Source: Bispira polyomma (Eukaryota). Taken from it: a stretch of DNA of 64,000 nt. Shown here piece by piece: positions 35,597 through 59,205 of this stretch. Both the position numbers and the translations under genes were made by a program. The number at the start of each line of letters is the position of its first letter. The first letter of the stretch is position 1. The notes under the pieces were generated by a model. That model was not told the origin of the DNA and made no database searches. It was given only the letters and a program-made list of their open reading frames with translations. Location: assembly GCA_965649765.1 (NCBI GenBank), contig OZ287755.1, positions 45,942,001 through 46,006,000 of the forward strand, in the 5' to 3' direction.

Positions 35597-36054
35597 TTAA
35601 CTGTTGTTGACTGTTACTTATTAAATATAATAATAAATAATATAGTATCTCCCATCTGAAACGAACAGCATAAGTTGTTATCCTATTTTTATTTTGGATT
35701 TCAAGTCCTGTTTCAAAACCTGCAGTTTGATCAAATGGCTTGGATTTTTTTATTCTTTTGATCTAAATAACTTAATATTTTTGTAAATGTTTTGTTTAAT
35801 GTTACTTTTAATATGCTTGGTGTCGCATCTGGCAAATTGGTAGTGGAGAAAATCAGAACATGGTTAATTTCCTACTGTTGTTAATATCTTCTATTATGCA
35901 ATTCAATTTTTCCATTTATTTGAATCCAAGACGGCAGAGATTTTTATCACTATATCACTACTAAAAGTATACATAAAACATTGGGTTATCATGTTGCCAG
36001 TAAAACCTATGTACATTATGTATTAGGATGATCAATGCAGCAAGACTTAGTGTT

Positions 36055-36255
36055 AGCCTAAGCTTCCTTTCAGCACATCCCGACGTTGGCTGATTTATGT
36101 GTGTCTGAGCCGATCTGACGCCGGCCGATGTAACGCTTCTTTTCATCAGATATCTACTAAATATTTTAATATATATATTTTTTGTTTTCTTCAAATATCG
36201 GGCAGACCTCCCGATTTTTTCCCTCCCTGACAGATGAAATATATTGACCCAACAG
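36055..36255 (-). mobile_element. Internally deleted copy of the Harbinger-type MITE
   Basis: gcctaagcttcctttcagca... matches the TIR and subterminal sequence of 50647-51354. Confidence 0.7.
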
Positions 36256-37545
36256 AGGTTGGCATTTGGTTATATTAAGGACTTATAAAATCGGCCAAGA
36301 AAAAAAATTCTGAAATCAATATCAATATTGCATACTTAAATCCTTTGCAACATGTATTTCAATTTGCTATTTACAACTTTTTTGTAACTGGTCACACGAC
36401 CATGTCATTTTGAATATAAAATTAACAACTTTTCATATGGCACAAATTGTACTAAAATAAAAGACAAATGTGCAAAGATTATTTTATTGAACAATAAGGA
36501 AACATGTGGGAGCTAATCTTTATACAAACAACATAATTACTTTTAAACAAGTCATCCTTGAACATATATTTATTATTAAAACACTTACTTCACACAAGTT
36601 CTTATACTATTCACCAATGTGGTCCACAACAATAACGGCAATTACTCCATATGTAACTCATATATGAGACAATCTATATTTATAATAATCATTCAAACTG
36701 ACTGATTAAAATTCCACTTGGCTACAGTTTTAATAGTATATTCCTTCCTCCAATAAGATGTGTTCCAACGATTAACATGTGGCTCCACTGATAACAATGA
36801 AATGACAGAAATGAAAAATTAGAGTTTGGCAGACATCAAATATGACATCACTACGGCCTCTGAAGATTTCTGAAAAGAAATATTGCATTAAATTATTAGG
36901 TAAATATGGTGCCACATTGGTATCAATTGCTACCAATTACTGGCATACAGACAGACACTATAACTAAAGTCGAGAAATATTCTTGAAAATTGTGAATAAA
37001 GTTACCTGGTGTGCTTTACAAAAGGCAACACATTGTTTATCAAAATACATAACTCATGAATACTTTATTTTTGAATCACTATAATTTGTGTTCATCCATG
37101 CTTGGTAGAATGCTATTTATGATAAAGATACATCTTTCAAAGAAAGCTTTAGAGTTTAAGTTTAGAGTTTACTTCCACTTTAGAGTATCTTTATTAAAAT
37201 AAAAAAATGTCATAGAGTTGATACATTATTACCTATATTATCATAACATGGTGTGACAGCAACATTTTGGAAAATAGAAGGTTCACAAAGTAGAAGATGC
37301 ATTTTAGTATAAAATAATAGGAAAATATAAATTTGGGAAATCACAAATTTGCTTGTAAAATCGAATGTTTATATAATAGAAGTTTAGATAGTACAGACTG
37401 TACTGTAATAAAGTACCTTTCCTACGGTTTTCTAGTATAATAAAAGTAAACGTTTACTTTAAATGTTAACTTAAAAATAAAATAGATGTTTTTAGAAAAT
37501 TTAACATTGTTTCATCTCTTAAAATGCCCTCATTAACTTTTACCT

Positions 37546-40500
37546 TTAACGTCCCTTCGTGGCCTGATAAACAGGATCGTAGTCCACTCTGTATGCCCCT
37601 CCGACATACTTGCCAGCACCTTGACCTCCGCCAACTTGACCTAAATTTTGAAAAAGTTAAAAAAAAAATGATTAGGTCATAACATTCTTCCATTTGGAAT
37701 ATAAAATTTTCCTGAAAATGCATTGGTAACTGTTTGATTACATCAGTCCTATTTATTCCCCATATAAATGAACTGAATGAACACTTTCATATACCCAACA
37801 TATTGTACTTGACATGTGATGTCTGCTTCATACATTTTTGAGTATCATTTGATGAACCTAAGATGTAGCTTTTTTCTTCCTAGCTGAATAAACTATTTAT
37901 TACTTCAAATTGATGTATAGTGTCTTTTTAATTTAATCATCTTTTATCAATGGACTCTGTTAAATTTAGATATTATTATACCAGGCAACACTCAAGATTT
38001 ATAATTTATGGATCCATTTGTCAACATAGCATTCACTGTTATATTAAACATGGTGATTTGGTAGAGTTTTTCATTGCAAAGTAACTTAATTATATCACAT
38101 CTTTTCCTCATGCTAAAGTAGATAGTAACATGACTCCCTATCGAGTTAAATCTAGTTATCACCACGAAAGCCTGTTGAAAGAAACATCAAAACAGAATAA
38201 GCTCAAACTCTGTTAATGTAAGTTCTATCAGGAGAGTATTTAGAGTAAGCTGTGGTCACTTTAGTATGCCTCAATCAACATTTCTACTACATGTAAACAA
38301 AAGGAAAATTATATTGATGATACAGTATGGACTGGAACTCTAGCTTAAGCCATACCAGACTCTTCTGCTACATCAACTGCCGCTGCTGAGTAGCTATTGG
38401 AGCTTGAATATCTGGTGGGTCCTGAAGAGTAGTAACGGTAGCTGCCACGAGTAGGATAGGTGTAGCGGTAGTAGCTGGATGGAGCACTGTAGGAATAATA
38501 CCTAAAGGGTTGGCTGTAGGTGTAATACCTGAAAATATTGTGGTTTTGGTTAGCTGCATTGACATCATTACAGATTCCTACATTTAATATTACTACCTTT
38601 TTTAACAGTGGCATTATGCTGAGCTAAGATATAAGTAGCAAAAACTCCACCGGATGTACTTATTGTTTAACTGATATAACATTAAATTCTATAATACCTG
38701 TTTCATGACTTATGGGTAGCTAGAATAAAATTCTGATTATGACTACTGAACAATGTTGTTATTACTGTACAATAATTTTGCTTGTTGCGCCTCATAATCC
38801 GTTAGTCAGAGTTTAACTGCCATTATAGAATTAATTGGATTAGATTAGCTTAAAGTAATTTAGGTTTAGTTTAAACTGAGTTTAGATTGATATTGTTGTC
38901 CAAGTTACGCAGGTGTAGTACACCCATGAAATCTAGCCCCTTTACAGTGAACAGTACAGTAAACATCTTTAAGTTCTCGTAAACTCGGAACAAACAACAA
39001 CGAAAGTATCACAGGAAACCAAAGCAAATTTACATTTGTTTAAAGCTTCGTAATTATTCTTTAAAATTTGAAATTGAATCTATTTTATAATAATACAGAT
39101 TGTTAGATTTACTTGTTATAAAGACGGACCTGCATGGTAGGAAATAAACTTATATTGAATATTACTCTTTGTCTAACTTTTGCAGCCTGATTAAGTGTTG
39201 TAATGAATTACTTAAAAGAGGGCAAATACCACTCAAACATTATTTTATTGCCTACTTGAAGACCAATATATATAGTACATTCGTCTGCAGCAATCAGCTA
39301 TTAGAAACCTGTACAAATATAAACATTTTCCATGCTACTTCAGCAAATACAAAGACTCATATACCTGGTTAGTTAAACAGGGTATAGAAATATGTGGTTG
39401 TCGTCTAAGTATATGCATACATTCCTCATTTAAAGTCTGCATTTATTATTTATTGCAAAAATAGTATTTATTTTAATATTTGTTAGGCAAATTAGTTTGA
39501 AAGCTGATTATCATCTTATCTGACTGCTGTGGCTTAGCAATGGTTGTATTTTAGGGGTGACCTATTATATATGGCTGTGCATTCATGGAACTGAATCCAT
39601 AATAGCATAACTACATTTGTAGTTCAAGTATTTAATGAAACTATTTCAAAGCACTGAAGTATGATTACATTAACCATACTTAATATGTGGTAAAACATAG
39701 TTAAACAGTCACATAAATTTGATGTCAAGCTTCAGAATTGGTAAAAAAAATGACTGACCTGCTTGGAGTTCCGTAGTTGGAGTAGGAGCTCCACCTACTA
39801 TAAGCACCACCACCACCACCACCATAGTAGTTGCCTTTGCCATAACCTTGCACTGTTTGGAAGAGTAGTGTATGCCATTTTGATGTGATAACATATACTG
39901 ACAAAGTTAAATATTATTCTATAATCATCTATTGGTAGCACATACAATCGGCCACTGAAAGGGTTTGTATTTTATCCCCACTTGGGGCACCAAGTACAGC
40001 CACATACATAGTGGGTCATATGAATACTTATAATAAATAAATTATTTGTTCAGATATCAGCTGGTTTATGTTTTTGTCATTTAGCTGATAAAAATATATT
40101 TCTGTGGGTCACATTTGATTGGAAATAAATTTTGAAAAATACATATTGCACAAAAATCGGCTAATATCTGAACAAATAATTTTGCACCCCGACTAAAAAA
40201 TCTGATCTTATCTCATACATAGAGGTCCCTACAATGTAACTATTGAGATATAAATATAGACTGATATTAACATATGGAAGGGTAAACTTACTGATACATA
40301 ATAATGTAAATATTATTCCAAATATAACAATTGCATGGGCAATTCAGATAAGGCTATATCTGTTATACATCAGATTTATACTGCCAAGCCAGGTATATTC
40401 CCCTTAGGTATGTCAATCGTCCCTTGTCGGTGTTTTGGGAAGGAGCCTAATTTACTAGGGAACCAACACTTATTTTAACCAACACTTGTATTCAGTCTGT

Positions 40501-41437
40501 TTTATCTACTCTCAGCAGGCACATCGTTAATCTGTTTCTGTTATACATTTCTGTGTGTAATTACAATTACTTTATGCTGTGTTATCAACATCATTTTAAT
40601 TGTTGTTTGTAAACTATTTTGAACATTATTATAAGACTTTGATGAATTTGTAGTGATTAGCATTTTCTTGTCTTTACTCTTACTGTTTAAAGAAGAAAAA
40701 CAACATGTCCCCTACCTAAAGTATGTAAATAATATTAGATAACGTATGCCATCATTACTGTAAACCAATGTATATTTTGTGTGTATATATTTTTTATGTA
40801 TTGAAATAGTATAAACAACTACTGATTATGTCTGTCGATTTAATGAACTGACCATTTCAATCCAACACAGTTGTTTTCTTGTTTTGTTATATACTCTGTC
40901 GAGGGCAGCTATAAATAGTGCTAGCAATACGTGTTGAGTTAACAAATATAGAAAAGTTAATGTGATATTTTTAACAATTACCTTTGTTAACACAAACTGC
41001 CTTACATTTTTATTATCTAGTTCTATAACGGATCTGCATCTGAACCTGTTTATTTGAAAGGTCACATCTAAGTAAGATAGGTTTTGAGAATCAGTATCAT
41101 TCTACCCACTTTTAGTATAAAATATTTAACTGTAATACATACTACATCTATACCATACATACTACATACTCACCATGTGCAACTTGCCTGGTTGAATTGA
41201 AAGGTTATTCTTCAAAGTCATTCATCATTAAAGCTTTTCTAATAATGACACATATACGCTGCTTCAAATGTTACAAGATAAGTTTTGAGCATCCTTATCA
41301 GTCTACCCACTTTTAGTACACTATATTACAAATTATTTTACTGTAGTACATACTACTACTATACCATACATATAATCATACTCACCAATGGCAACTCCAA
41401 GAGCTAGCGCAACAAACAAAACAATCCACTTATCCAT
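37546..41437 (-). CDS. Secreted Tyr/Ser/Gly/Arg-rich protein, copy 1 (137 aa); exons 41437-41386, 39852-39759, 38528-38356, 37640-37546; non-coding last exon ~36869-36465
   Basis: GT-AG exons with phases 1,2,1 give MDKWIVLFVALALGVAIVQGYGKGNYYGGGGGGAYSRWSSYSNYGTPSRYYTYSQPFRYYSYSAPSSYYRYTYPTRGSYRYYSSGPTRYSSSNSYSAAAVDVAEESGQVGGGQGAGKYVGGAYRVDYDPVYQATKGR*. AATAAA at 36488-36483. The same structure is conserved in the paralogue. Confidence 0.87.
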
Positions 41438-41495
41438 GCTGTCTGGTTACAAGTAATCTAAACAACTCAGGCTTAAACATTGGCAAGTCTGCGCC

Positions 41496-41502
41496 TTATA
41501 TA
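41496..41502 (-). promoter_or_regulatory. TATA box of Tyr-rich gene copy 1
   Basis: CTATATAAGG about 60 nt upstream of the ATG; TTTATAAGG at the equivalent position in copy 2 (58689-58681). Confidence 0.65.
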
Positions 41503-43639
41503 GACAAGGAACATCCCGAAGTACTGGCCCCTGCCTTAAAAACTAAGGGGAGCTTCAGAAATACCATAAATTAGCAGCATAAAAATTAGTTAAAAACTAG
41601 ACATTAAAGTTTTAGTTAAAGTTCCTGTCAGTCAACTTTAATTATCCGAAACAGATGTGAGATTATTTTAGGAAGATTTTATTAACCCTGTAAGTATCAG
41701 GTTGTACTTGCTGTCAGCAACATTTGATTTATTGCCCTTGCAATTAATGTTTAACGATATCAAATTAATTACTTTATAAATAGTGTAGTCTGCTATGATT
41801 TATTTGTTAATCACTGAATACTTCATGTAAAAGTAAAAACATAAATGTATATTTTAAAATCCCAGCATCAGCCCAACTTGGTTAAAAAGCTAAGTTTCAT
41901 ACTTAAATTGTGACAAAATACATGCTCTTATTATGTTGGACACAACAAATCAAAATAAACTCTTCAAATTGGAAATAGTCCCCTCTTTGATACCCATCTG
42001 CACTGAAAAACTGAACCTTCAGATCAAATTTCCCACCACACATCAACCATCCCCAACTGCCCCCTTGTTTACATTGTTCCTAAAATATAATCAAAGTAAC
42101 TGTAACTTTCCTGCTGTAATTGAACTAGAGCGGATTGATCTGAGCCAGATGTAACTGAAAATAGTATGATCTAGATGTATTAATGTTGATGTATTTACGA
42201 TGTTAAAGATGTCTTTCTTACAGTGATTTACTTTTCCAAGCATATCTCCGGAAATAGACACTGAAGAAGTAATGAAGGTTGTAATGTAAGCTAGTAATGA
42301 AGGTTGAGGTCACATGTGTTTATCAGATTATGTTGTATGATGGGTTCTCTATATGTGGAAATTGGAGCTTACTTATTATCACTGTAGTCTTATGTATAAT
42401 AGATTGATATAGGAACAGGGTACAGTTACAAGACTTTCATTTACCAGTAGTGCAGGATGTCTGCTTTTGTAACCCATATAATGTAATAAGTAATACAAAA
42501 TACAGAAAAATAGTGACATATGAGTTATCATTTTCAAATATTAAGATTTAATATACATGGCTGTAGAAAATATATCACAGCATGTACATAAATCGAACAT
42601 ATCTAGACAGAGGATTGAAGATCATCACACAGTTTACCAAATGTCAGTGACATAGTATTGATTTAATAGGTCCTTGCTAGTGTAACTGAAAGACTCCTAT
42701 GCTACCTCTGCAGTCATGAGCCTTAATCTTGACCATGGCCTCTATGTGAAGAGGTCAGCAGTAGATTTGCTGAAAGCCACCTCAAAATTTTAGGAAAAAC
42801 CCCTTTTTTACTTTTCTGTCTACTCCCCCCTAGTTAGTATTACCGTAGGTTTTGATATCACCTGTACTCAGTGCCATATTCAATTTGTACACTGAACAAC
42901 AACAAACATCAACAAATTTTGGTGGCAACATATTATGTTTTTATTAGTTCTTGTTTTGTGATCGTTATTTACACTGTATGTACATGTTATTTAACTTTAC
43001 TCATGTAATCGGGAAACAAGGAGAAGTCCAGCTGCTGGTGGGTCGAAACCCCCAAAACAGCTAATAAGAGAATCAATAAGGCATGTCACAGCCAGCAAGA
43101 AATTTAACAGCCAATACACACGTTAGTTCTAGTGTACCTCCAATAATATCCTTGAGATTAGAGAGGATATGCCAATGCTGCTAACTTCCCAGTGGCATAT
43201 TACTGCTTGTAATCACACAGTTTCTGATCCAGTGGGATCTGAAAAAAAACAACATTATGGCCCATCTTACTGACTGGCTCAATGTTTAGACAGGATTGAG
43301 GTCTGGGACACCAGCAACTGTAACCCACTTATGTCGCCTCATACTACGGCCAATGTTACTGTACTAAACCAAAGAATCAATGATTGTATTGCAATGCTCC
43401 AGCCTATCTAGGTATGACATACACCATCACACCCAAATACAGATTGGGTTCAATTCCAAGTTCGACAGGCCCACCTAAAAAGAGAACTCATGTGGCGGGA
43501 TAGTTCGCAACATTGCCTGATGTCCAAGAAGTGGTTACCAGACACTAGCAAACAATGAACTCTTACAAGGTCAGACCATAACATCATAAGATACTAATTA
43601 AATTAATGTCTTAATTCTTGGTTTGGTTTATGCTCTTTG

Positions 43640-44450
43640 ATTGATTGAATCTTATCTTGACCATCCCGGTTAATTCATTGGGGTCAGTGAAGCCAAATCA
43701 TGTTTGGATCTCTTGTTTAGTGGCCCACAGGAGTCTGTCCTTGGGCCCCTTATTTATTCACTGTACACAATTCCACTAGGAAAAGTAATATTCTCACACC
43801 GGAATATAAATTATCACTTTGATGCAGATGATACACAAATCTACTGCTCTCTCACCCCAGAAGGTGTTCCTGGGCCCTCAAGCTGCCTCACATCAATTGA
43901 ATCTTTGATGAATAATTCTAAATTGAAATTGAACTTTTACTTAATGGTTCTAAAATTAAGAGGGTAAAGGTTCTAAAAAAAATTTATGGCAACTCTTCTT
44001 GGTAGCTACACTATTTCCGCCTAGTGCTAAAATCCTGGGTGTCACTTTTGACTTTGATTTTTACTTAAAAAATCTGTTAATCCTGCTACTGCAAAATGCT
44101 AAACTTTTGTAGGATTCGTCAACACATAACTATGGAAAATGCAGTTGTAGTTGCAAATGCCCTGTTGAGAATTATCTCTACATATAAATCGCACTATATC
44201 AAATGTATATGTTATTTTATGATGAGTCAACTTGATTACTGCAACTCACTACTTTATGGCATCAATTATGCAGAATTGAATGCCATGCTGGGCCTTGCTC
44301 ACAAACAACCCCTTTGCCTGAAAAGTTGCACTGGCTACATATTCGGTTCTATATAAAATTCAAGGTTAATGTCCTCATTTTTCAGACTGTCCATGTGGAG
44401 CAGCCAGCCTACTTATCATCTATGTTGTCTCTTAGCAATCTCACCAGAAG
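43640..44450 (+). mobile_element. Old degraded L2/CR1 RT fragment
   Basis: [44 protein letters not shown]. Confidence 0.85.
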
Positions 44451-45739
44451 AAACTGGGTAGGTGCACATTAAACGCCAACCAGGGGGTATCCTATTACCA
44501 GACAGGTGGGGTGCCTTTTATCAGGCAGGTGGGTTGGGTATTGTCTAATATATATCAAACCCCCAAATTGAGCATTAGTAATTATGGGAAATATTTGGGG
44601 AGAGTTTAAAAAACTGGATTTGGGACTGTTTGAGGTTTAGCATGTTTCTGGTTGCTAAGGACGCAGAAAGATGTAAGTTGCCTTGGAAGCCAAAAAAAGT
44701 TTTTTTATAAATATAAGTAAATGTCGTGTGTACAAAGTAAAATTTTACTGAGAATATGATTTCCGTGTATGAAATTGGCACATACTTTGATAAAAAGTGT
44801 GCCCTCCATAAACTCTATTGAATGGCTCTAAATTTTACAATTAACTCTATTATCACAGCCGCCATCTTGGATTTTCTTGGAGCCAAAAAGTGATATGCCA
44901 ATAATATGCTAATCTTAAAACATAGACATCTTAGCCATGCAGACACCGATTTTCATTCGGGAGAAAATGTCAGAAACTAGATGTACATGGTTTTCAGATG
45001 ATATAACTGATTTGGACTTAGATGTATATCTTGTATGCGCCTTTTTGGAGCATCTGAAGATAGAAGGAAAGCCAAAACCTGAGCAAATATGTCAGAAAGT
45101 AGTGAATGGATTTGCACGCAGTAAACAGTGCTGGAAAGCTTGGAATGTTATATTTAATTTAATATAAAGTATGACATCGTAGCTTCAGTTGGCCCGACCC
45201 CCAAACAAAACCCCTAAAATCCCAATGGATGAGGGCTTGACGTAGTGTGGCTTCCCTCAAAATGTTGACGTGTGTGTTGAAATGAATTCCTTACAAAGTT
45301 TTTCTATCAATGGATTTCAATGCTTTTGCCTGACTTACCTGGGCGTGACAACGTTTTCCCCATAGGGTGCAGCCTTCTTGCGAGATGACGTTTTCACCAT
45401 GTCACAGCCTTTTTATGACACATCCTTTTCTCCAAGGTCTGTCTTTGGGATATAAGTATAGACATGTGAAGGGCTTTCTTCTCATGCAAATAGAGCACAC
45501 CACCAAAAACGATCATTCTATAGGAGTCTGACTGTCTGACTGTGGCTTCAGCAATATCTTCTGGGTCCAGGGCAAAAGGCCAGAGATAAGTCCTGGATGC
45601 TTTGTTACATTATAGCAATTTTAAACTGTACAATAAAGCAGAATTGATTCTTTCCTAGACCAGCATAAATGCCTAGGGGTCCTCCTGTAGACCGAGCCAT
45701 GGCAGGCTTCTATTACATAGGGGATAGCTTGCTATGCTC

Positions 45740-48240: not shown

Positions 48241-49779
48241 TTTTTTTAATCACTACCAGCCATTTTTCTTTCAAGTAAATGTGCCATGCTGTGTGACATG
48301 CCCCGGTGATAAGATCTGACTGCTTCGTTATGATGTGTGTTTGTGTTAATATTAATATTGCAAATTCCACTTAAATGCAAAGATCTCTATATATCTATCT
48401 GTACAGTTTTATATTATGTACACATATAATATTTTATCTTAAAAACATTTATAAGAATAATAATTTGCTCTTTGGAGGTCTCTATTGGAGTCTAAAATAT
48501 AAAACTCTACACCTTGTGTTGTAGAAACTTTAATATGCGGCAAATTTTCACATAAAATATTTAAACTGTATACATTATTAATGCTATATTTTCTATATTT
48601 TGGATTGACATGAACATAAATGTGGATATGATTTCCACTGGTGTATTGGATGTGTGTATTGCACAAGGGGCCCATACATAACAGTAGTGTAATATGTCTC
48701 CATGTAAATCCACGTAAATCCACAGGTGTACTATATGGGTGTATTGTACAATGTCCCTATGTATTACATCAGTGTAATGTGTCTCCATGTGAATCTACTG
48801 GTGCACTGAATGAATGTTGCTACAGAAAATAGTGTAATATCTATATGTCTCCTGGGATACCATCAGCTTTCTGAAAAAGAGTGTCACAAGACTTAAATAT
48901 GATCATCTAATATGCGCAATGTACTTCCTCCTTGTGTATGTGAACAGTAAAAGAATGGACTCTTCGCTGAGAAAGGCTGGGGTTTTGGGCTCAAAGACAA
49001 CCCTGGGATTCGATGGGTAGTGTTTTTAAAATTTCAAGTTCGTATTGGTCAGGCAGCTTACCATCAACATTTTGAAAGAAGGGGAACGACTGGACCAAAG
49101 CACCATTTTTGTTTTATTGTTTCATTAAACCATAAGCCATGGATTTGGGGTAGGAGGCATTTAATCTGATCCGTTTTTCAGTTTTTATTGCCAAAAAACG
49201 AAAAATCAAATTTTTTACACTAAAATGGGCCATTCACAGTGACATTGACAACAATCTTTACGTGGATAACTTCCACGATATCACAGTTGGAAGTTCATAG
49301 GAGGCATTACTAGTTAGTAAATGAGTAGCAATTATGTTTCAGATTGATATTCCTATTATTGACAACTTTTTTATTTTTTAATGATTACCTACTTTTACTA
49401 GTAGTAGTTAATCTGATCCAGGGCCTGTATTTATGAAAGGTATTTTTATGAAAAAATAGCTTAGTGATACTAATTTACTAACTTAAGCCAGTCTTTGACT
49501 TGGCGAAGGATTTAAATTTAAAAGAGCTAGGTATAATTCTGAAGTTGTGCTTTAATATAGCAGTTTTAGTCCCAAACAGCTCACCTCTTTACTAAAACAA
49601 AGTTGGATCACAAGGATCATTTCATGAAACAGAAATCAGTATGTTCCAATTTCTAACAATAACAAACCTTGATAATTGCTGGGAACTACCGAATCAACCA
49701 ATAAAAAGACAAAATATGCCTTGCCTTGAAAGAAATTAATTAATGTTGCTCCTCTAAATAAAAAACCTCAACAGTGTAT

Positions 49780-50500
49780 GAGGGACACACTGATGAAGGT
49801 AAGACAGAAGAAAACTGTTGGTTGCAGAATGCCATAAAACTCATCAATGCAGAATGTTTGAACAAGGGTGACACTGTGGCTTGGTCAGCCTATCATGTTA
49901 AGTCACTCGGCACATCAGATAAACTGCTGACACCGCAGACACTGCTTCACCTCTATTCAATGGGAGGCTGCAACCGCAGTTATGATAACACATGGAATGG
50001 ACATCCATTGAGAAGCTAAAGAATTCCTCAACCCTGGACAGATACCAATTATTGCACTTTATGACCTGGCAAAGGATATCCAGTGAAACTGGACTCAGAC
50101 ACATGGATGTTTTTTTTTTTGAATTTGGATATTTAATGTTCACTCTAGTACCTGTTTAGGTTATATTAGGATAGGTAGTTGGAAACGCTGGAGGAAACAT
50201 TGCATACAGTTGATCAAGGTTCTGCACTGAAACCAGCGGCCCAAAGTAAGGAACTACTACCTTCCCACATAGGCATTGACGGAAGTCGAACCCAAGCCAG
50301 CCGATCCTAGACGTGAGAGGACAGTGATTGTGAAGCACAATGCTTGCTAACGACTAGTCCACCGCTGCCCCCCTCATACACATGGAGAAAATGTTAAAAT
50401 GTTAGTTCGTCTCCACACTGAGATGGCACTGTATTATACAGGGACTACCTCAAAGGTTCAGGCTGGACAGCAGCATTAGCACAGAAAGGGATCTCACCTC
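49780..50500 (+). mobile_element. DNA-transposase relic (Academ-like), interrupted by a SINE
   Basis: Fragments AWSAYH, EAATAVMITHGMDI, FLNPGQIPII, LYDLAKDIQ*NW, THGE, LHTEMAL and DYLKGSGWTAAL across frames. The family assignment rests on recalled motif similarity only. Confidence 0.45.
50110..50372 (-). mobile_element. tRNA-derived SINE (same family as 32816-33068) with TSD
   Basis: B-box GGTTCGACTTCC; TSD ctca[g/t]acacatgga at 50094-50107 and 50373-50386. Confidence 0.88.
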
Positions 50501-50646
50501 CAAGCAGAGCTGATCTACGTCTAAAGTGGCCTACTATTACCTTCGACAAGGAAGTTATGTTATTTAGCCTATCTCCCTAATTTGGTTTTATGTTTGTCAC
50601 AATAATTACACAAAAAACAATGGATCGAATTACAGGAATTGTATAA

Positions 50647-51354
50647 GCCTACGCTTCCTTTCAGCATGTTTTTATCGGCTGATGTCGGCCGATTTTTTCC
50701 CTCATTATACAATACTACCAAATGCTTCCTTTCAGCAGATTTGCATCAGATCCGATCAGACGTCGGTCGACGTCTGTTTGGCCAACATATTTTATCTCTC
50801 AGGGAGGGAAAAAATCAGGAGGACTGTCCGATTTTTAAACAAAAATGGCTGCAAAAATGCTATCACAGGTATAGTTTCCATTCCATACATACTCAATATT
50901 CATCAGATATTGAAGTTACAAATGGACTGAGAAAGGTTATTTTATTGTGATTACTGTGTTTTTCCCCCATCAAAATTCGTTAAGAAACGGCTCAGATATT
51001 AAGATTAAAAGATGGGTACCCCACTTAACTTCCTCCTTATATTGTAAATAATTCATCACAAAACGTCATAATGACGTCAGTTTTGTAGCTACGTCACAGC
51101 TTAAACATCAAAAACTAAAAATGGGTATACTTACTTAACTGTATATATCTTAGCAGTTTCTCAACGAATTTTGGTGGAAAAAAAAGCACTGTAATCACAA
51201 TAAAATAACCTTTCTCATGACATTTTTGAAGCCAACATCCGACGAATATTGGGTATATATCTGATGAAAGGAAGCGCTACATCGGCCGACGTCGGCCGAC
51301 GTCGGACACACACAAATCGGCCGACGTCGGAATATGCTGAAAGGAAGCGTAGGC
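50647..51354. mobile_element. PIF/Harbinger-type (Tourist-like) MITE
   Basis: TAA|gcctacgcttcctttcagcat ... atgctgaaaggaagcgtaggc|TAA: perfect 21-bp TIR with 3-bp TAA TSD and subterminal tcggccga palindromes. Confidence 0.88.
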
Positions 51355-51809
51355 TAAGGGGTAATGATTTGGGCAGAGAGGCAGATCCCAATTAGATGTT
51401 TTTGTCAATATTGTGTCTTGTCATAGGTATGCAGTCTACTCAGTGTTCTCCAATTGTTAAATATTTTGGTTAATAGATAGACAGCAACACAGTTAATTAA
51501 GAAGACAACAAACTGTTGATAGTCTCTGCATAACCAATAAACAAGTATACGCAAGAACTTTTCCATAGATACCCTAGTAATACCGTTTAGTTTTATTAGT
51601 CCCAAGTATAAATATATATCATATGTTACACAATTATCCGATTTTTGTGCCGTATTCACATTAATATCCCAAATTGCAGACACGTTTATACTGTAGATAA
51701 TGCTATTGATCCCTACATTTGATCTTTTGACAAGTGCAAAACAACTGAGAACAATATGACCGATCAAAAAGGAATAAAATATACTTTAAGTGTTATAATA
51801 TGTTTTCAG

Positions 51810-51876
51810 GTGAAAGCAATACTCCATCTTCGTCACAATCATCCTGGGCCAGTGGCATTCTCTGCTAATGGTCTTG
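51810..51876 (+). pseudogene. Decayed duplicate of TRAF exon 31585-31800 (large internal deletion and indels); remnant of exon 30258 at ~48945
   Basis: tgttttcag|gtgaaagcaatactccatcttcgtcacaatcatcctgggccagtggcattctctgctaatg..gtcttg|gtgggtatttg versus the parent, with homologous flanking introns. Confidence 0.8.
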
Positions 51877-54133
51877 GTGGGTATTTGTTATACTTCATTA
51901 TGTGCATAGATCAATGCATATATAACTCCTTCAGTATATCTATTTACTGTGCAGTGGTATTTTGTGTGTGCCAAATAGTGTGAACTAGATAGTAATGAGC
52001 TCTTATTTGTTTAGACAGGAAAGAATGTTGATAAAAAAAATTTATTTTGTGTGCATAATTAAAAGTCAAAGCTACAAAAATCCATAATAGTCTGATTTTA
52101 CATTTATTGATATCATAAACCACACTTAATGTGATCATCTGTGTAGAAAAAGCTAAATTTTCTGCCAACGCTTTGCATTTTGTGTTATTGGTAGGCAAGT
52201 TATTTCTTGTAAGTTGTATTGTAATATAAATCTTGGTACAAATATATAATATTAGTGTAAATATTTTTGAATTCTATGAAAACGAATGGAATTTTTTTTA
52301 CTAATTTGGTCAAATATCTTTCTTGACCTACCAGTAGTTTAAATTGATCATATCTTGTGTTCTGGTAGTTGCAGAGTTGGTCTTGTAATGAGAAGGTCCT
52401 TTGTTTGACTCTAGGGAATACCATAATGGTACTACATACAATCTGTCAACATATTTCGACAAGCTATTAAGACCATTCCTTCACAGAGAACAATAGCATA
52501 ACGATGCTTTGCTATCAATTTGGTACTATATTAAAACTATAAATCAACCAATCAGCAAGCAATTGACACAATTTGTTACTTTGTAATATTTATATAACAC
52601 CATATTTATAACTACTTTTAATATGTTTTGTGTCACATCGGGAAATTTGCTGGTGGAAGAAATCAGAACATGGTCGTTGGATAAAATTTTCTACTATGCA
52701 AACCAACAGCCTTCAGAAATTTCAATTTGTTCACATATATGTCATGGCAGAGTTTTAAATCCAACAAGACAGCAGAAGTGGAAGGCAAGTGTGTCATCAC
52801 TGACTTACTACTAAAAGTACACACATGGACATCATGTTGCTGGTGAAACCTATTTAAAATGTTAGGAATTAGGGTAATAAATTCAGCCAAAAATATTTAC
52901 TGTCAGAGTCAAATCTGAGTTTCATATATCTGCCTACTGACATCATATTTAAATACTTGCAATATGTATTTTAAATTACTATGTACAACCTTTTTGGTAG
53001 CTAGCCAAATGCACATGTCATTTTTTGCATATAGCATCAACATATTGTAATATGGGACAGGGCCAAAATTTTACTAAAATAAAAGGCATATGTGCAAAGA
53101 TTATTTTATTTAACAATAATGAAACATGTGGGAGCCAATCTTTATACAAACAACAGAACTACTATGGCACAAATTTTCCTTGTACTTACATTCATTAAAT
53201 CAAACAATCACTTCACACCAGTCTTAAATACTCACTTATTAATTAAGTCCATAACACTTAGTGCATATATTCCATATGTAGCCCATATATCAGGCAAACT
53301 ATATCTATCTAATCATACAACTATGTACACAGATATAGTATACCTAACTAAAATTGACTGCTTAAAATCCCACTTGGCTAAAGTTTTAATAGTATATTCC
53401 TTCCTCCAACAAGATGTGTTTCAACAACTAACATGCTGCTCCAGTGATAACATTGAAATGATAGAAATGACAAATCAGACTTTATCAGACATCAAATATG
53501 ACGTTACCACTTCCAAGTTCTGAAAGAAATGTTTCAGTACATTAACCGTCAAATATACAGTTATCAACAGCTACCAATTATTGGCACACATACAGACACT
53601 ATAAATAAACAAACAAGTCCCCCATATTCTAGAAAATTGTGAATATAGTTACCTGTTCTACTTTAAAAAATGGAACCTTATTCTTTTTTACAAATTATGA
53701 ATATACATGACTCATGAATACTTTATTTCTGAATGATTGTAATTTGTATTTATCCATATTTGGTAGAAAGCTAGTAATGTCGACAGAAGAGATACAAGTC
53801 ATTTATATATAGTTTAGAGTGTCATAATGAATATTTCATACATATGATACAGTTGTAACCTCATTATCCTAACATTTTGGAAAACAGAAGATTCATGAAG
53901 AAGAAATGCATTTTAGTATTAAACAATAGGACAACATAAATTTGGGAGATTACAAATTTGCTCTTAAAATGGAATGTTTAGATATTAGTGGTTGAAGTAT
54001 ACGTATATTAAGTACCTTGCCTTCTATTATAACCAAGGTAAACATTCCCTTTAAAAGTTGACTCTAAAATTATATTATTTCTAAATATTGAACATTGTCT
54101 CATCTCTGAAAATGACATCATTAACCTTTACCT

Positions 54134-57100
54134 TTAGCGTCCCTTGGTGGCCTGATAAACAGGATCGTAGTCCACTCTTGATGCCTCTCCGACATACCTG
54201 CCACCACTAACTTGATCTGAATTATGTCAAAGCAAAAAAGTATTAGATCATATCATTCATCATATTTGAATATATAATGTTCAACAAAGTGGTTTGCTAA
54301 ATGCTTTATTAAATCAGTCCTTTTTATCCGCCATATAATTGTACTGAAGTTTTCATGAATCCTTTAGTATATTTAATATATTGTACATGACATGTAAGGT
54401 CTGCTTCATACATTTATTAAGTATCATTTGATGAACCTAATATGTAGCTTTTTTCTCCTACCTAAATAAACGATTTATTACTTAAAATTGATATAGAGTG
54501 TCTTGTTTAACTGATCACCTTCTATCAATGAACTCTGCTGAATTCAGATATCATTGTACCAGGCAACATTTAAGATTTGTAATATATGGATTCATTTGTC
54601 AACTTAGCATTCATTGTTAAACTCAAATGGTGATTTAGTAGAGTTTTTCATTGCAAAATCATTTCCCTCTTACAACCAAAAGGATTATAGATTAGTCATC
54701 ACCACTATAGCCTAAACTGTTTGAAGAAACATCAAAGCTCAAATTTGTTAAGCTAAGGTCTATTAGGAGCGTATTTAGATAAACTTCAGTATGCCTCAAT
54801 TAACATTTCTACTATATATAAACAAAGGAAAATTTTTATTGATTATACTTTAATGACTGTAACTGTAACTTAAGCCATACTAGACTCTTCTGCTACATCA
54901 ACTGCCGCTGCTGAGTAGCTATTGGAGCTTAAATATCTGGTGGGTCCTGAAGAATAGTAACGGTAGCTGCCACGAGTAGGATAGGTGTAGCGGTAGTAGC
55001 TGGATGGAGCACTGTAGGTATAATACCTAGTGGGTTGGCTGTAGGTGTAATACCTAAAAATATGGTGGTCTGGTTAGCTGCATGAACATCATTAGTTGGT
55101 ACTCATATTGCTATCGAAGCTATGCAAAATGTAGTACTCCCATGAAACCGGCCCCTTTTGCTTTATCAGTACAGGGCACATCTGGAGATTGCCGTGAACA
55201 AGAGAACAATAAGGCATGTTACATTTGTTTAAGTTACATATGAAACCGAAGCAAAATTATACATGTATACAATTCTTATTTGAAGTTTGCATTTGGTTGT
55301 TAAAAAATAGTATTTTTTCACTATTTATTAGGCAAATTAGTTTTAAAGTTGATTTACATCTTATCTGACTGTTGTGGCTTATCAATGGTTATATTTTAAA
55401 GTGACATATTATAAATGGCTGTGCATTCACGAAAATAAATTCATAATAGCATTAGCCCTCAAAATTCGTAGTTCAGGTATTTAATGAAACTATTTCAAAG
55501 CACTGAAGTATGATCACATTAACCATACTTAACACTTGGTAAAACATAGTTAAACAGTGACATAAATTTGATGTCAAGCTTTAGAATCTGTAAAAAAAAT
55601 GACTGACCTGGTTGGAGTTCCGTAGTTAGAGTAGGAGCTCCACCTACTATAAGCACCACCACCACCACCACCACCATAGTAGTTGCCTTTGCCATAACCT
55701 TGCACTGTTTGAAAGAGTAGTGTATGCCATTTTGATGTCATTACATATACTGACAAAGATAAATATTATTATTTAAACATCTATTGGTAGCACATACTAT
55801 CGGCCACTAAACGGGTTTGTATGTTATCACCACCTGGAGCACCCAAGTACAGGCAGATACATAGTGGGTCATATGAATAGTTATAATAGATAAATTATTT
55901 GTTCAGATATCAGCTGATTTATGTTTTCATGCAGTTGATAAAAATATATTTCTGTGTGTCACATTTGATTGGAATTAAATTTTGAAAAATACATATTGCA
56001 CAAAAATCGCCTAATATCTGAACAAAAATTTTTGCACCCCCTGACCAAAAAATCTTATCTTATCTGACACGTAGAAGTTTCTACAGGGTAACGACTGATA
56101 TAGAAATATCGACTGATAATAATATATGGAAGTGTAAACTTACTGATACATATTAATGTAAATAATATTATTACAAATATTGCAGTTGCATGGGCAATGC
56201 AGATAAGGATAAAAATAGATTATATCTGTTAGATATTAGATTTATAATGCCAAGCTAGATGTTTTTCCCTGGGTATGTCAATCTTTCCTTGTCAGTGTTT
56301 GGGGAAGGAGCCTAATTTACCAGGGAACCATCACTTATTTATTGTATTCAGTCTGTTTTTTCTACTCGCAGCAGGCATTTCCTTTTTCTGTATCTGTTAT
56401 ACATTTGTGTGTGTAATTACAATTACTTTAAGATGTGTTATCAACATTATTATAATTGTTGTTTGTAAACTATTTTGAACATTATTATGACCTTTTCATG
56501 AAGCTGTAGTCATTAGCATTCACTTGGCTTTACTCCAACTGTTTGAAGAAGACAAGCCAACATGTCTCCAACGTAAAGTATGTAAATAATATAAATGGAT
56601 TTAGGAGGTTCCATTCTCTTATAGTGTATGAAAAAATGATGCATGAAAGTAGTTCTTTTTAGTTTTCATTGGCTTTATTTTCTTACAATATTTTATTCCA
56701 TAATTCGATGTACAGATACAACAGGGGGACATATTTGTCTGAGATATTCCGGCACAAGGCCATTTTGTAACTTATACATAAGATGAGGCTTTTTTATTTT
56801 ACGTCTTTGTTGTAGTGGTTGAAAACCACACTCACACAACAGAGAATTATGACTTGTTTTTTATATTGTAAAGCAAGAATCACGCTGAATTTTTTCTAAC
56901 AATTTACTATGTTATTTGGTACAGTTGTCAAACAGTTCTGCACTATATTCTAGGATCGGAGGCACAAAACCTACATAAATTTGCCTTTTTGCTGAACGTG
57001 GTAACTGGAATGAATCACCTTTTAGTTGCGATAGTGATTTGTATGCTCTGTCTAGGATCTTTTCTATTTGATTATTCCATGTCAGTTTTGAATTAAATGT

Positions 57101-58624
57101 TATCCCTAAATGTGTTAGGGTATTGACAAACTGAATTGTTACATATCCAAAATATAAATTTGGATAATGAAGCTGGTTTAATCATTTTGAAAAAATAATT
57201 TATTTTGTTTTAGTGGGATTAAACTTTACAAGCCAATGCTTACCCTAATTTTTATTATTTTTAAATCCTGATTTAACTTTCCAAAACAACTCTGACTGTC
57301 TGATATAGCTTTATAAATCACTCCTAAATCTAAGTGTACAAGCTGTATTTGTAATAGAAACATTTAAGTCTAAATTAAAAGCAAAACATAAATTTATTAA
57401 GCCGCTGTCTATCACAGTAGGATCACAATGGGTTTGAGTGTTTTAAACCAACACAGAAAATTGTTTAATTTCATTGAATCTGGAGTATGCCCTTATTGTG
57501 GCCCACTTAAGGAGGATGCAAAACATTGGTTTTCGCTGCTCTGAGGTTGGACATGCTTCAGAAAATAAACATAGACATACCTGAAATGAAAGTTAACTTT
57601 AATAAAAATAAACTACTTCAAATAATTATAAATGGCACCGGTAGTTTTGATGTAGATAAAAAATTATTTGAAATTGTGCATTAATATAGGGTAAATTCCA
57701 AAAGGTTCAGTTGATTCAAAATCTGTAATATTCATAAATGTATGATGAATTGTAAGAACGATGTCATGTGTAGCCTATATTTATTATTGTTATAATGCTG
57801 TTTGTATTTGAAATGTTAATTTTGGACAAGAACCTCTAGTGGCCTCACAGCTGTGGGCAATTGTGATGAAATAAATAATGTTTAAATAAAACATAAAAAT
57901 AATTTTAAATAATGTATACACTCGTTAGTGTAAACCAATGTATATATTGTGTGTATGTATTTAAATATTATAAACAACCAGTAATTATGTCTCTCAGTTT
58001 AATAAACTAGCTATTTCAATCCAACACAGTTGTTTTCTTGTTTTGTTATATACTCTGTTGTGAGGAAGCTATAAATAGTATTATAAATACATGTTGAGTT
58101 AACAAATATAGAGTAGTTATCTGATATTTTGAACAATAACCCTTGTTAGCACAAACTGCGTCACATTTTCTTTTTCTACTTCTTTTCTATCATAAATTTT
58201 TTCAAACACTATAACTGATGTGCATCTGAACCTGTTCATTTGAAAGGTCATATCTAAGTAAAATAGGTTTTAAGCATCATTATTACTCTTCCCACCTTTA
58301 GTAAAAAACATTTAACTGTAGTACATACTACTAATATACCATACATATAATCATGCTCACCATGTGCAACTTGCCTGGTTGAAATGAAAGGTTATTCTTT
58401 CAAGTCATTCATCATTAGAGCCTTTCTATTAATGACACATATATACTGCTTCAAATGTTACAAGATAAGCTTTGAGCATCAATATCAGTCTACCCACTTT
58501 TAGTACACTATATTAGAAATTATTTTACTGTAGTACATACTACTACTATACCATACATATAATCATACTTACCAATGGCAACTCCAAGAGCTAGCGCAAC
58601 AAACAAAACAATCCACTTATCCAT
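54134..58624 (-). CDS. Secreted Tyr/Ser/Gly/Arg-rich protein, copy 2 (134 aa); exons 58624-58573, 55704-55608, 55053-54881, 54216-54134; non-coding last exon from 53519
   Basis: MDKWIVLFVALALGVAIVQGYGKGNYYGGGGGGGAYSRWSSYSNYGTPTRYYTYSQPTRYYTYSAPSSYYRYTYPTRGSYRYYSSGPTRYLSSNSYSAAAVDVAEESNQVSGGRYVGEASRVDYDPVYQATKGR*. All splice sites are intact, indels versus copy 1 are in frame (+3, -12), and AATAAA lies at 53110-53105. Confidence 0.87.
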
Positions 58625-59136
58625 GTTGTCTGGTTACAAGTAATCTAAACAACTCATGCCTAAACATTGGCAAGTCTGCCCCTTATAAAGGAAACATCCC
58701 TAAATAATGGCCCCTGCCTTAAAAACTCATGGGAGCTTCATAAATAGCACACACATAAAAATATATCACAAGTTCCACTGTTTATAAAACTAGTTAAAAA
58801 GTAAACTTAGTAAAAGTACATTAACTTTAATTATCTGAAACAGATGTTCTTTTAAGAAAGAGTTAATTAAACATCAGATTTTAGTACCAGATTTTACACT
58901 TTTTTAACATTGCATTTAATGTTTAACAATTTAAACTTAATTAAAAATACAATGGTTTAGAGTGTTATGATTGCTATATGTTATACACATTTAGAATGCT
59001 TGATTTAAGCTGATTTGGAAGTTTATAACTCAAACACCAAAACTGTTAAAAGTATCCACAAAATTCTTGCATATTGTTTAGGTCCTGGAGAATATAACTG
59101 TATCACAGGAAATATTTTAGTATATGGCAATTTTGG

Positions 59137-59140
<4 letters not shown>

Positions 59141-59202
<62 letters not shown>
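59141..59202. repeat. (TA)n microsatellite
   Basis: About 30 TA units. Confidence 0.95.

Positions 59203-59205
<3 letters not shown>

What the first reader, a model, noticed from the sequence alone, without database searches (positions are those of the whole stretch)
36465..58690. Pair of cryptic four-coding-exon genes for a small secreted, Cys-free, Tyr-rich repetitive protein
Seen: two intact paralogues that the ORF track only shows as fragments. Each has a signal peptide (likely cleavage VQG|YG), a YY-polyGly segment, 4-5 nine-residue repeats (TP[S/T]RYYTYS, QP[F/T]RYY[S/T]YS, APSSYYRYT, YPTRGSYRYYS, GPTRY), an acidic linker (AAAVDVAEES) and a conserved tail RVDYDPVYQATKGR. Copy 1 has 25 Tyr in 117 mature residues. 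Exon 1 is identical, exon 3 nearly so, and indels are in frame, while the introns have visibly diverged, which points to purifying selection. Established: Tyr next to Arg/Lys in a Gly/Ser-rich secreted chain is the composition of DOPA-modified adhesives and of sclerotized or shell-matrix proteins (mussel foot proteins, tubeworm cement proteins, shematrin-type proteins). Inference: a lineage-specific structural or adhesive biomaterial family; I do not recognise the repeat from any named protein.
Basis: partly seen in the sequence, partly recalled or inferred. Interest (0 to 1): 0.8.

Follow-up and report, generated by a model that had tools for sequence, protein, structure and literature searches.

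The report
Orphan tyrosine-rich secreted protein gene pair
Two neighbouring, intact four-exon genes in an annelid worm genome encode a small secreted protein that is one-fifth tyrosine and has no detectable relative; it is probably a building block of a hardened or sticky extracellular material, but no RNA or protein data show where or whether it is made.

Summary
On the minus strand lie two complete genes: copy 1 at 41437-37546 (137 aa) and copy 2 at 58624-54134 (134 aa). Each has four coding exons, GT-AG introns, a TATA box 65 nt before the ATG and a conserved AATAAA 410-480 nt after the stop.

The mature protein is about 12.8 kDa, pI 9.4 and Cys-free, with 21% Tyr, 17% Gly and 16% Ser. Prolines sit every 9 residues in xPxRYYxYS-type repeats.

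Exons are 95.8% identical against 82.9% for introns (p = 8e-14). Both coding indels are in frame. The 14-residue C-terminal tail differs only by synonymous changes. So the protein frame is under selection.

All exons occur only twice in the 1.04 Gb genome. A word search, an exhaustive HMMER search, Pfam, the Atlas and metagenome contigs gave no relative.

The host is an annelid, not a mollusc. It has many tyrosinase loci, but none lies near this pair.

The function is inferred, not shown: composition places it beside the tubeworm GY/SY-rich cement proteins, without homology. Arg/Lys-Tyr adjacency is no more than composition predicts. Only DNA runs exist, so expression is untested.

I rate it a new member of a known kind, of moderate interest.

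The parts
36331..41563 (-). Duplicated unit 1 (about 5.2 kb) holding gene copy 1 with its 3' flank and about 125 nt upstream of the ATG
   Evidence: blastn of the two regions against each other: collinear blocks at 77-88% identity
52944..58746 (-). Duplicated unit 2 (about 5.8 kb) holding gene copy 2. It has a 1.3 kb extra insert in intron 1 (about 56593-57896) and about 660 nt less than copy 1 in intron 2
41495..41502 (-). TATA box of copy 1 (TATATAAG), 65 nt upstream of the ATG
   Evidence: read directly; conserved position in copy 2
41386..41437 (-). Copy 1 exon 1: ATG plus 17 codons of signal peptide, phase-1 donor GTGAGT. An in-frame stop lies 12 nt upstream of the ATG
39759..39852 (-). 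Copy 1 exon 2: end of the signal peptide (VQG), then YGKGNYY-Gly6 and a Ser/Tyr stretch. The first repeat starts here
38356..38528 (-). Copy 1 exon 3: Pro-punctuated RYY/YxY repeats and the acidic linker
   Evidence: AF2 gives no confident fold
37546..37640 (-). Copy 1 exon 4: Gly-rich spacer, conserved 14-residue tail ending KGR, stop TAA at 37548-37546
37064..37069 (-). Copy 1 candidate poly(A) signal AATAAA, 479 nt after the stop, aligned with the one in copy 2
58681..58689 (-). TATA-like box of copy 2 (TTTATAAGG), 65 nt upstream of the ATG
58573..58624 (-). Copy 2 exon 1, identical to copy 1 exon 1; donor GTAAGT
55608..55704 (-). Copy 2 exon 2 (one extra GGT codon in the polyGly run)
54881..55053 (-). 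Copy 2 exon 3 (6 substitutions against copy 1, no indel)
54134..54216 (-). Copy 2 exon 4 (12-nt in-frame deletion in the Gly spacer; tail identical apart from 2 synonymous changes)
53722..53727 (-). Copy 2 candidate poly(A) signal AATAAA, 409 nt after the stop

Best explanation
These are two real, tandemly duplicated, lineage-restricted genes of an annelid. Each encodes a small (about 12.8 kDa mature), basic, Cys-free, intrinsically disordered secreted protein.

Shown from the sequence:
- A complete transcription unit: TATA box, short 5' UTR, signal-peptide exon, three further coding exons, poly(A) signal.
- Protein-level constraint since the duplication.

Inferred:
- The protein is exported through the secretory pathway and serves as a matrix or adhesive component of a hardened extracellular material (tube lining or cement, cuticle or chaetae).
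- Its many Tyr residues, spaced by Pro in 9-residue units and mixed with Arg, would give multivalent aromatic/cation-pi contacts that condense the protein.
- The Tyr residues would also be substrates for the worm's many tyrosinases (Tyr to DOPA to quinone, or di-Tyr cross-links).
- The invariant C-terminal tail, ending Gly-Arg, is probably a sorting, processing or docking element.
For: Gene reality:
- Canonical splice sites, an in-frame stop upstream of the ATG, and TATA and AATAAA conserved in both copies.
- CDS GC 0.50 and GC3 0.45, against intron GC 0.30.
- Exons 95.8% identical against introns 82.9% and 80-nt flanks 80.9%.
- Non-synonymous divergence 0.038 against 0.128 in intron 1, p = 9e-6.
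- Both coding indels are in frame.
- The tail's 14 codons carry 0 non-synonymous and 2 synonymous changes.
- The alternative reading frame of exon 3 is open in copy 1 only.

Secretion: the N-terminus is MDK, then a 15-residue hydrophobic core, then VQG with small residues at positions -3 and -1.

Material-like character:
- Y 21%, G 17%, S 16%, R+K 10%, no Cys, pI 9.4, GRAVY -1.0.
- No predicted fold: pLDDT 61, pTM 0.12.

Host context:
- Annelid (PF16915) with 37 tyrosinase-domain matches on many chromosomes.
- Tubeworm cements are built of basic GY-rich and SY-rich secreted proteins modified by tyrosinases (PMC12621633; PMC11667028 abstract; PMC12403961).
Against: - No RNA run holds the locus; the only holders are DNA unitigs. 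Expression, tissue and splice junctions are therefore unverified.
- There is no homology to any cement, foot or shell protein.
- No tyrosinase, and no other Tyr-rich gene, lies within 100 kb.
- Arg/Lys-Tyr adjacency and YY pairs are not above composition.
- Gly is half that of Sa-1/Sa-2, and the basic residue is Arg rather than Lys.
- dN/dS of 0.52 is not strongly constrained.
- dS (0.074) is somewhat below intron divergence, and reads hint at gene conversion between the copies. Conversion could inflate exon identity.
Confidence: 0.5

Rival explanations
1. A secreted host-defence (antimicrobial) peptide or protein of the Gly/Tyr-rich cationic type. It would be matured by removal of the signal peptide and possibly by C-terminal amidation at the terminal Gly-Arg.
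For: It is small, cationic (pI 9.4), Gly/Tyr-rich, lineage-restricted, tandemly duplicated and fairly fast-evolving, with dN/dS 0.52. The C-terminus ends in Gly-Arg, a classic amidation signal after carboxypeptidase trimming (my own knowledge). It has no relatives, as is common for such effectors.
Against: At 117 residues it is long for this class. Net charge is modest. There is no amphipathic or Cys-stabilised module and no YGGYG/YGGWG-type repeats. The regular Pro-spaced Tyr repeats look structural. There are only two copies and no expanded cluster.
Confidence: 0.15
2. Silent or decaying duplicated ORFs. The high exon identity would come from gene conversion rather than selection, and no functional product would be made.
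For: There is no expression evidence, no relatives anywhere and a TE-rich, gene-poor neighbourhood. dS (0.074) is below intron divergence. In other individuals copy 1 seems to carry copy-2 states at 38406/38429 and 41383, at about twice single-copy depth. The 80 nt after exon 1 are also 97.5% identical.
Against: At exons 2-4 identity drops at the exon borders, which conversion tracts would not respect. Both frames, all 12 splice sites, the TATA box and the poly(A) signal are intact after 13-19% neutral divergence. Indels are in frame. The tail shows only synonymous changes.
Confidence: 0.12
3. A structural protein of a reproductive or developmental envelope (egg coat, jelly or larval adhesive) that is tanned through tyrosine. 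This would work like flatworm eggshell precursors or coccidian oocyst-wall Tyr-rich proteins rather than like tube or cement material.
For: The same compositional arguments as the main reading, and many tyrosinases in the genome. Tyr-rich wall proteins cross-linked through tyrosine turned up in a literature search (titles and occurrence counts of PMC3261165 and PMC10729351 only; neither paper was read). That flatworm eggshell precursors are tanned by tyrosinase is my own knowledge.
Against: Nothing in the sequence separates this from the main reading. It differs only in tissue and stage, which cannot be tested here.
Confidence: 0.13

Closest known systems
Sabellariid tubeworm cement proteins, GY-rich and SY-rich classes (Pc-1/-2/-3, Sa-1, Sa-2, Sa-3C)
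   Same: Annelid host. Signal peptide, basic pI (9.4 against 9.4-10.2), low complexity, Tyr-rich, small to medium size, and a block layout (Gly/Tyr block, Ser/Tyr block) like the diblock Sa-3C. The expected chemistry is tyrosinase-made DOPA.
   Different: No detectable sequence similarity. Tyr is higher (21% against 9-15%) and Gly lower (17% against 33-36% in Sa-1/Sa-2). The basic residue is Arg rather than Lys or His. Repeats are Pro-punctuated 9-mers (xPxRYYxYS), not G-Y-G-K units. There is no Cys. Gland expression and DOPA are unknown.
Mussel foot proteins mfp-1 (Pro/Tyr/Lys decapeptide repeats) and mfp-3/mfp-5 (small, basic, about 20% or more Tyr/DOPA)
   Same: A secreted, basic, disordered protein about one-fifth Tyr. 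Short Pro- and Ser/Thr-containing repeats carry Tyr beside a basic residue, and the size is close to the small interfacial mfps (my own knowledge of the family).
   Different: Different phylum and no homology. Arg-based, and Ser-rich like neither. Modification is unknown.
Mollusc shematrin/KRMP-type Gly-Tyr shell framework proteins
   Same: Secreted, Gly/Tyr-rich and repetitive, with a short conserved C-terminal tail.
   Different: The host is not a mollusc. There are no XGnX Gly runs beyond one Gly6-7 stretch. The tail (RVDYDPVYQATKGR) is not the Lys/Arg-Tyr type basic tail. There is no homology.
Low-complexity aromatic-rich segments of phase-separating proteins (FUS-type SYSGYS/Tyr-Arg 'stickers')
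   Same: Alternating Tyr/Ser motifs (YSYS, YTYS, YRYTY) with Arg in a disordered chain. This is the physical basis for the proposed self-condensation (my own knowledge; composition).
   Different: Those proteins are intracellular, whereas this one has a signal peptide. There is no RNA-binding domain, and Arg-Tyr adjacency is not above chance.

Membership tests
Tubeworm GY-rich cement proteins (Pc-1/Pc-2, Sa-1/Sa-2) | N-terminal signal peptide and basic mature protein | tested here: met
   MDK + hydrophobic core + VQG; pI 9.4. Judged by inspection; no SignalP was available.
Tubeworm GY-rich cement proteins (Pc-1/Pc-2, Sa-1/Sa-2) | Gly about one third of residues, in short G-Y-G-K/H repeats | tested here: not met
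   Gly 17%, Lys 2.6%; repeats are xPxRYYxYS, against Sa-1 G 36%/K 13% and Sa-2 G 33%/H 8%
Tubeworm GY-rich cement proteins (Pc-1/Pc-2, Sa-1/Sa-2) | Detectable sequence relationship to a named cement protein | tested here: not met
   No word-sharing candidate. The exhaustive phmmer search of 1.84e9 representatives gave only a spurious bacterial repeat protein. Only exon 3 was searched.
Tubeworm GY-rich cement proteins (Pc-1/Pc-2, Sa-1/Sa-2) | Expression in cement or tube-building glands, and DOPA in the mature protein | not testable with these tools
   No RNA run holds the locus; X1-X3 are DNA unitigs
Mussel foot protein type (mfp-3/-5) | Small, basic, about 20% Tyr, secreted | tested here: met
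   117-residue mature chain, Tyr 21%, pI 9.4
Mussel foot protein type (mfp-3/-5) | Mytilid origin and homology to mfp sequences | tested here: not met
   Annelid marker PF16915 in the genome; no sequence hits
Shematrin-type shell matrix proteins | Mollusc mantle protein with repeated Gly runs and a Lys/Arg-rich C-terminal tail ending in Tyr | tested here: not met
   One polyGly run only; the tail is RVDYDPVYQATKGR; the host is an annelid. The family's features are from my own knowledge.
Gly/Tyr-rich antimicrobial peptides (nematode NLP/CNC type, arthropod glycine-rich AMPs) | Short mature peptide dominated by YGGYG/YGGWG-like units, in infection-induced clusters | tested here: inconclusive
   Only the first 15 mature residues resemble this. 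The mature chain is 117 residues, there are two copies only, and induction is untestable.
Any Pfam family | Match above the gathering score | tested here: not met
   Exons 2, 3 and 4 of copy 1 and exons 3 and 4 of copy 2 gave no family; the only row is E = 0.51, far below the cut-off

The most novel reading that the evidence does not exclude
This would be an Arg/Tyr-based, Pro-punctuated self-condensing glue or matrix protein that arose de novo in one annelid lineage. It would be the core of a tube-building or adhesive chemistry evolved independently of the Lys/Gly/Tyr cement proteins of sandcastle worms and of mussel foot proteins. An invariant C-terminal tail would act as a new sorting or docking signal.
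Probability: 0.25. Interest if true: 0.55.

Novelty: new member of a known kind. Interest (0 to 1): 0.38.

Why it matters
If the protein is made in tube-building or adhesive glands, it would add a compact (about 13 kDa), Cys-free, Arg/Tyr-based design to the small catalogue of sequenced annelid biomaterial proteins. It would also be a third independent route to Tyr/DOPA materials, beside mussels and sabellariids. Its size and simple repeat make it easy to express and test for coacervation and tyrosinase curing.

It also shows that ORF- or homology-based annotation misses such short multi-exon orphan genes. Without expression data it remains a well-supported gene pair of inferred function, like many low-complexity secreted orphans in marine invertebrates.

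Tried and rejected
- Mollusc origin is rejected: the annelid erythrocruorin-linker domain is present.
- Part of a transposon or a larger family is rejected. Every exon and the promoter occur exactly twice in 1.04 Gb. A profile search gave only hits with E > 1, and these translate to unrelated sequence. No other Tyr-rich open frame lies within 100 kb on either side.
- Assembly or haplotype duplicate is rejected. Introns differ by 12-36% and by large insertions.
- The hit P0001 (E = 5e-7) is rejected. It is a 738-aa bacterial lipase-like protein with four repeats whose short Tyr/Thr/Arg stretches add up.
- A recent tandem expansion of the 27-nt repeat is rejected: TRF finds no DNA-level repeat.
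- Arg/Lys-Tyr adjacency as a special feature is rejected by shuffling.
- A tyrosinase or glue-gene neighbourhood is not found.
- Led nowhere: the protein Atlas, metagenome contigs, an exact-product look-up of a neighbouring TE ORF to name the organism, and genome-note papers that do not match the 1,035 Mb size.
Searches and the fold used single exons by reference. The joined CDS was used only inside local scripts, for translation, composition and dN/dS.


Full report
**What is there.** The window is AT-rich eukaryotic DNA, about 30-40% GC. Comparing region 36000-42000 with 52500-59500 shows a collinear duplication at 77-88% identity: 36331-41563 against 52944-58746, both read on the minus strand.

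I read the four ORF fragments of each unit with their flanks. This gave two complete gene models, which I checked by script:

| | Exon 1 | Exon 2 | Exon 3 | Exon 4 | Product |
|---|---|---|---|---|---|
| Copy 1 | 41437-41386 | 39852-39759 | 38528-38356 | 37640-37546 | 137 aa |
| Copy 2 | 58624-58573 | 55704-55608 | 55053-54881 | 54216-54134 | 134 aa |

- All six introns are GT-AG, with phases 1, 2 and 1.
- An in-frame stop lies 12 nt upstream of the ATG.
- A TATA box sits 65 nt upstream of the ATG in both copies: TATATAAG at 41502-41495 and TTTATAAGG at 58689-58681.
- An AATAAA embedded in a conserved block lies 479 nt (copy 1) and 409 nt (copy 2) after the stop.
- Each unit is therefore a self-contained transcription unit of roughly 0.9-1 kb of mRNA.

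**The protein.**
- After a typical signal peptide (MDK, a 15-residue hydrophobic core, then VQG) the mature chain has 117 residues in copy 1 and 114 in copy 2.
- It is about 12.8 kDa, pI 9.4 and GRAVY -1.0, with no Cys.
- Composition in copy 1 is Tyr 21% (25 residues), Gly 17%, Ser 16% and Arg+Lys 10%.
- In order, it has: a YGKGNYY-polyGly head; a Ser/Tyr stretch; four to five Pro-punctuated units of the type xPxRYYxYS; the acidic linker AAAVDVAEES; a Gly-rich spacer; and the tail RVDYDPVYQATKGR.
- Pro falls at mature positions 27, 36, 45, 54 and 66.
- The first repeat is split by intron 2.
- TRF sees no repeat at the DNA level, so the repeats are old.
- AlphaFold2 on exon 3 alone gives no fold: mean pLDDT 61, pTM 0.12, no secondary structure. 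This fits disorder, but a single-sequence model is weak evidence.
- No exon piece matches Pfam.

**Is it more than chance, and is it selected?**
- Exons are 95.8% identical (17 substitutions in 402 aligned sites) and introns 82.9%. Fisher p = 8e-14, or 1.8e-6 against the best-aligned intron 1 alone.
- The 80 nt of non-coding sequence next to the exons are 80.9% identical. Identity therefore falls at the exon borders, except just after exon 1.
- dN = 0.038, dS = 0.074 and dN/dS = 0.52. That ratio alone is weak.
- Non-synonymous divergence is far below intron 1 divergence (p = 9e-6), while synonymous divergence is not significantly below it (p = 0.18).
- The two coding indels (3 nt in the GGT run, 12 nt in the Gly spacer) are both in frame. 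Only 6 of 31 small intron indels are multiples of three.
- The last 14 codons carry two synonymous changes and no replacement.
- The other open frame across exon 3 is 66 aa in copy 1 but cut to 27 aa in copy 2.
- CDS GC is 0.50 (GC3 0.45), against 0.30 in the introns.
- Together these show that the Tyr-rich frame is the one being preserved.

**How many copies, and where.**
- The window is C8:45,942,001-46,006,000 of a 1.035 Gb, 75-contig assembly.
- Exon 2, exon 3, exon 4 and the promoter plus exon 1 each occur exactly twice in the genome.
- A two-sequence profile of exon 3 adds only hits with E > 1, and these translate to unrelated sequence.
- A scan for Tyr-dense open frames in the window and in 100 kb on each side finds only these two genes.
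- The long ORFs around them are mostly LINE, DIRS/Ngaro and integrase fragments.
- The pair is therefore an isolated tandem duplicate in a transposon-rich stretch. The 11 kb between the copies also carries LINE reverse-transcriptase and integrase-like fragments.

**Relatives elsewhere.**
- The word-indexed search of 5.8 billion proteins found no candidate sharing three 5-mers. It used the 89-aa open frame around exon 3, so that proteins of 49-156 aa were eligible.
- The exhaustive phmmer search of 1.84 billion representatives returned one hit. It is a 738-aa bacterial lipase-like protein whose four repeats add up short Tyr/Thr/Arg matches, and it is spurious.
- The protein Atlas and JGI metagenome contigs gave nothing.
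- Three limits apply. Only exon 3 was used in the big searches. HMMER's composition filters penalise such sequences. Unannotated small exons of other worm genomes are not in these libraries.
- Absence therefore means 'no predicted protein on record', not 'no orthologue'.

**Host.**
- Notes of other agents on this genome call it an annelid, probably a fan worm.
- I tested the phylum only. The erythrocruorin-linker C-terminal domain PF16915, known from the giant extracellular haemoglobins of annelids, is present above cut-off at three places on C7 and in none of the 14 control genomes.
- The 'fan worm' part is untested.
- The genome also has 37 tyrosinase-domain matches spread over many chromosomes, with clusters on C1, C3, C12 and C14. 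The nearest to this locus is 21 Mb away.
- Tyrosinase expansions have been linked to DOPA adhesives in tubeworms (PMC11667028 abstract). Another tube-building annelid, Alvinella, has none (PMC12403961).

**Expression.**
- The single run search found three holders from one study. All carry about 92% of the words, introns included.
- Laid on copy 1 they are short DNA unitigs, with no splice-type joints at the exon borders.
- Expression, tissue and junctions therefore remain untested.
- The same table gives a side observation. At 38406 and 38429 (exon 3; runs X2 and X3, one sample) and at 41383 (third base of the intron-1 donor; all three runs), the only contig laid carries the copy-2 letter, at about twice single-copy depth.
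- This suggests that in those individuals the two copies are identical there, either through gene conversion or shared polymorphism. That could contribute to the 100% identity of exon 1 and its 97.5% identical 3' flank.
- It does not explain the sharp drops in identity at the borders of exons 2-4.

**What it most likely does.**
- Shown: a secretory signal, a disordered low-complexity basic Tyr/Gly/Ser chain, and selection on the frame.
- Inferred: an extracellular material protein.
- The nearest described class in the same phylum is the set of sabellariid cement proteins, sorted into GY-rich, H-repeat, SY-rich and miscellaneous groups. Homologues of these are hard to find even between related worms (PMC12621633).
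- Against the published Sabellaria values, this protein is richer in Tyr and much poorer in Gly, uses Arg rather than Lys or His, and has Pro-spaced repeats:

| Protein | Gly % | Tyr % | Other | pI |
|---|---|---|---|---|
| Sa-1 | 36 | 15 | Lys 13% | 9.9 |
| Sa-2 | 33 | 10 | His 8% | 9.7 |
| Sa-3C | 18 | 9 | Ser 48% | 9.8 |
| This protein (mature copy 1) | 17 | 21 | Ser 16%, Arg 8% | 9.4 |

- It therefore works plausibly 'like' a cement or matrix protein, but it fails the compositional and homology criteria for membership.
- The proposed mechanism is inference. It is condensation through many Tyr-Tyr and Tyr-Arg contacts, then curing by tyrosinase-made DOPA/quinone or di-Tyr links, with Ser/Thr-Pro sites possibly glycosylated or hydroxylated.
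- The terminal Gly-Arg could equally mark C-terminal amidation, which keeps a host-defence or signalling reading alive.

**Verdict.** I rate it a new member of a known kind (low-complexity Tyr-rich secreted proteins of tube-building worms), of moderate interest.

**Method note.** The joined protein went to no search or fold tool. It was assembled only inside local scripts, for translation, composition and dN/dS.

Noticed in passing
window 41074-41161 vs 41275-41372; 58296-58371 vs 58508-58583: In both copies, the last few bases of exon 1 and the first 100 nt or so of intron 1 are repeated about 200-212 nt further into the intron, at 84-86% identity. In copy 2 the inner copy keeps the exon end and a GT donor-like site. 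The repeat predates the gene duplication, and its meaning is unknown.
   Followed up: partly
window 38406, 38429, 41383 (reads of X1-X3): DNA unitigs of other individuals carry the copy-2 letter at these copy-1 positions, at about twice single-copy depth. This hints at gene conversion or shared polymorphism between the two paralogues around exon 1 and in exon 3.
   Followed up: partly
window about 56593-57896 (intron 1 of copy 2) and about 660 nt extra in intron 2 of copy 1: Copy-specific insertions. The one in copy 2 carries short ORFs typical of the 3' end of a LINE (a Cys-knuckle and a conserved tail motif), so it is probably a truncated retrotransposon inserted after the duplication.
   Followed up: no
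window 41600-52900: The 11 kb between the two genes holds reverse-transcriptase-like fragments (43704-44356, + strand) and an integrase-like ORF (46299-46691, + strand). No host gene was recognised there.
   Followed up: no
window 59121-59222: A (TA)n-type microsatellite reads as poly(Tyr-Ile) in all frames and is a false positive in Tyr-density scans.
   Followed up: yes
G000 C1:104.9-107.0 Mb, C12:4.3-6.3 and 15.6-20.0 Mb, C3:31.8 and 55.1 Mb, C14:8.57-8.62 Mb: Clusters of tyrosinase-domain exons, 37 matches genome-wide. This large expansion fits DOPA or quinone-tanning chemistry in this worm.
   Followed up: no
G000 C7:48,557,639-48,568,253: Erythrocruorin or chlorocruorin linker-chain domains (PF16915) on both strands within 11 kb, probably two neighbouring linker genes. 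Used here as an annelid marker.
   Followed up: no
L021 1658-2803 (G000 C8:46,067,658-46,068,803, minus strand): A single open frame of 382 aa that does not look like a transposon. It may be an intronless oxidoreductase-like host gene or a retrogene, about 62 kb from the pair.
   Followed up: no
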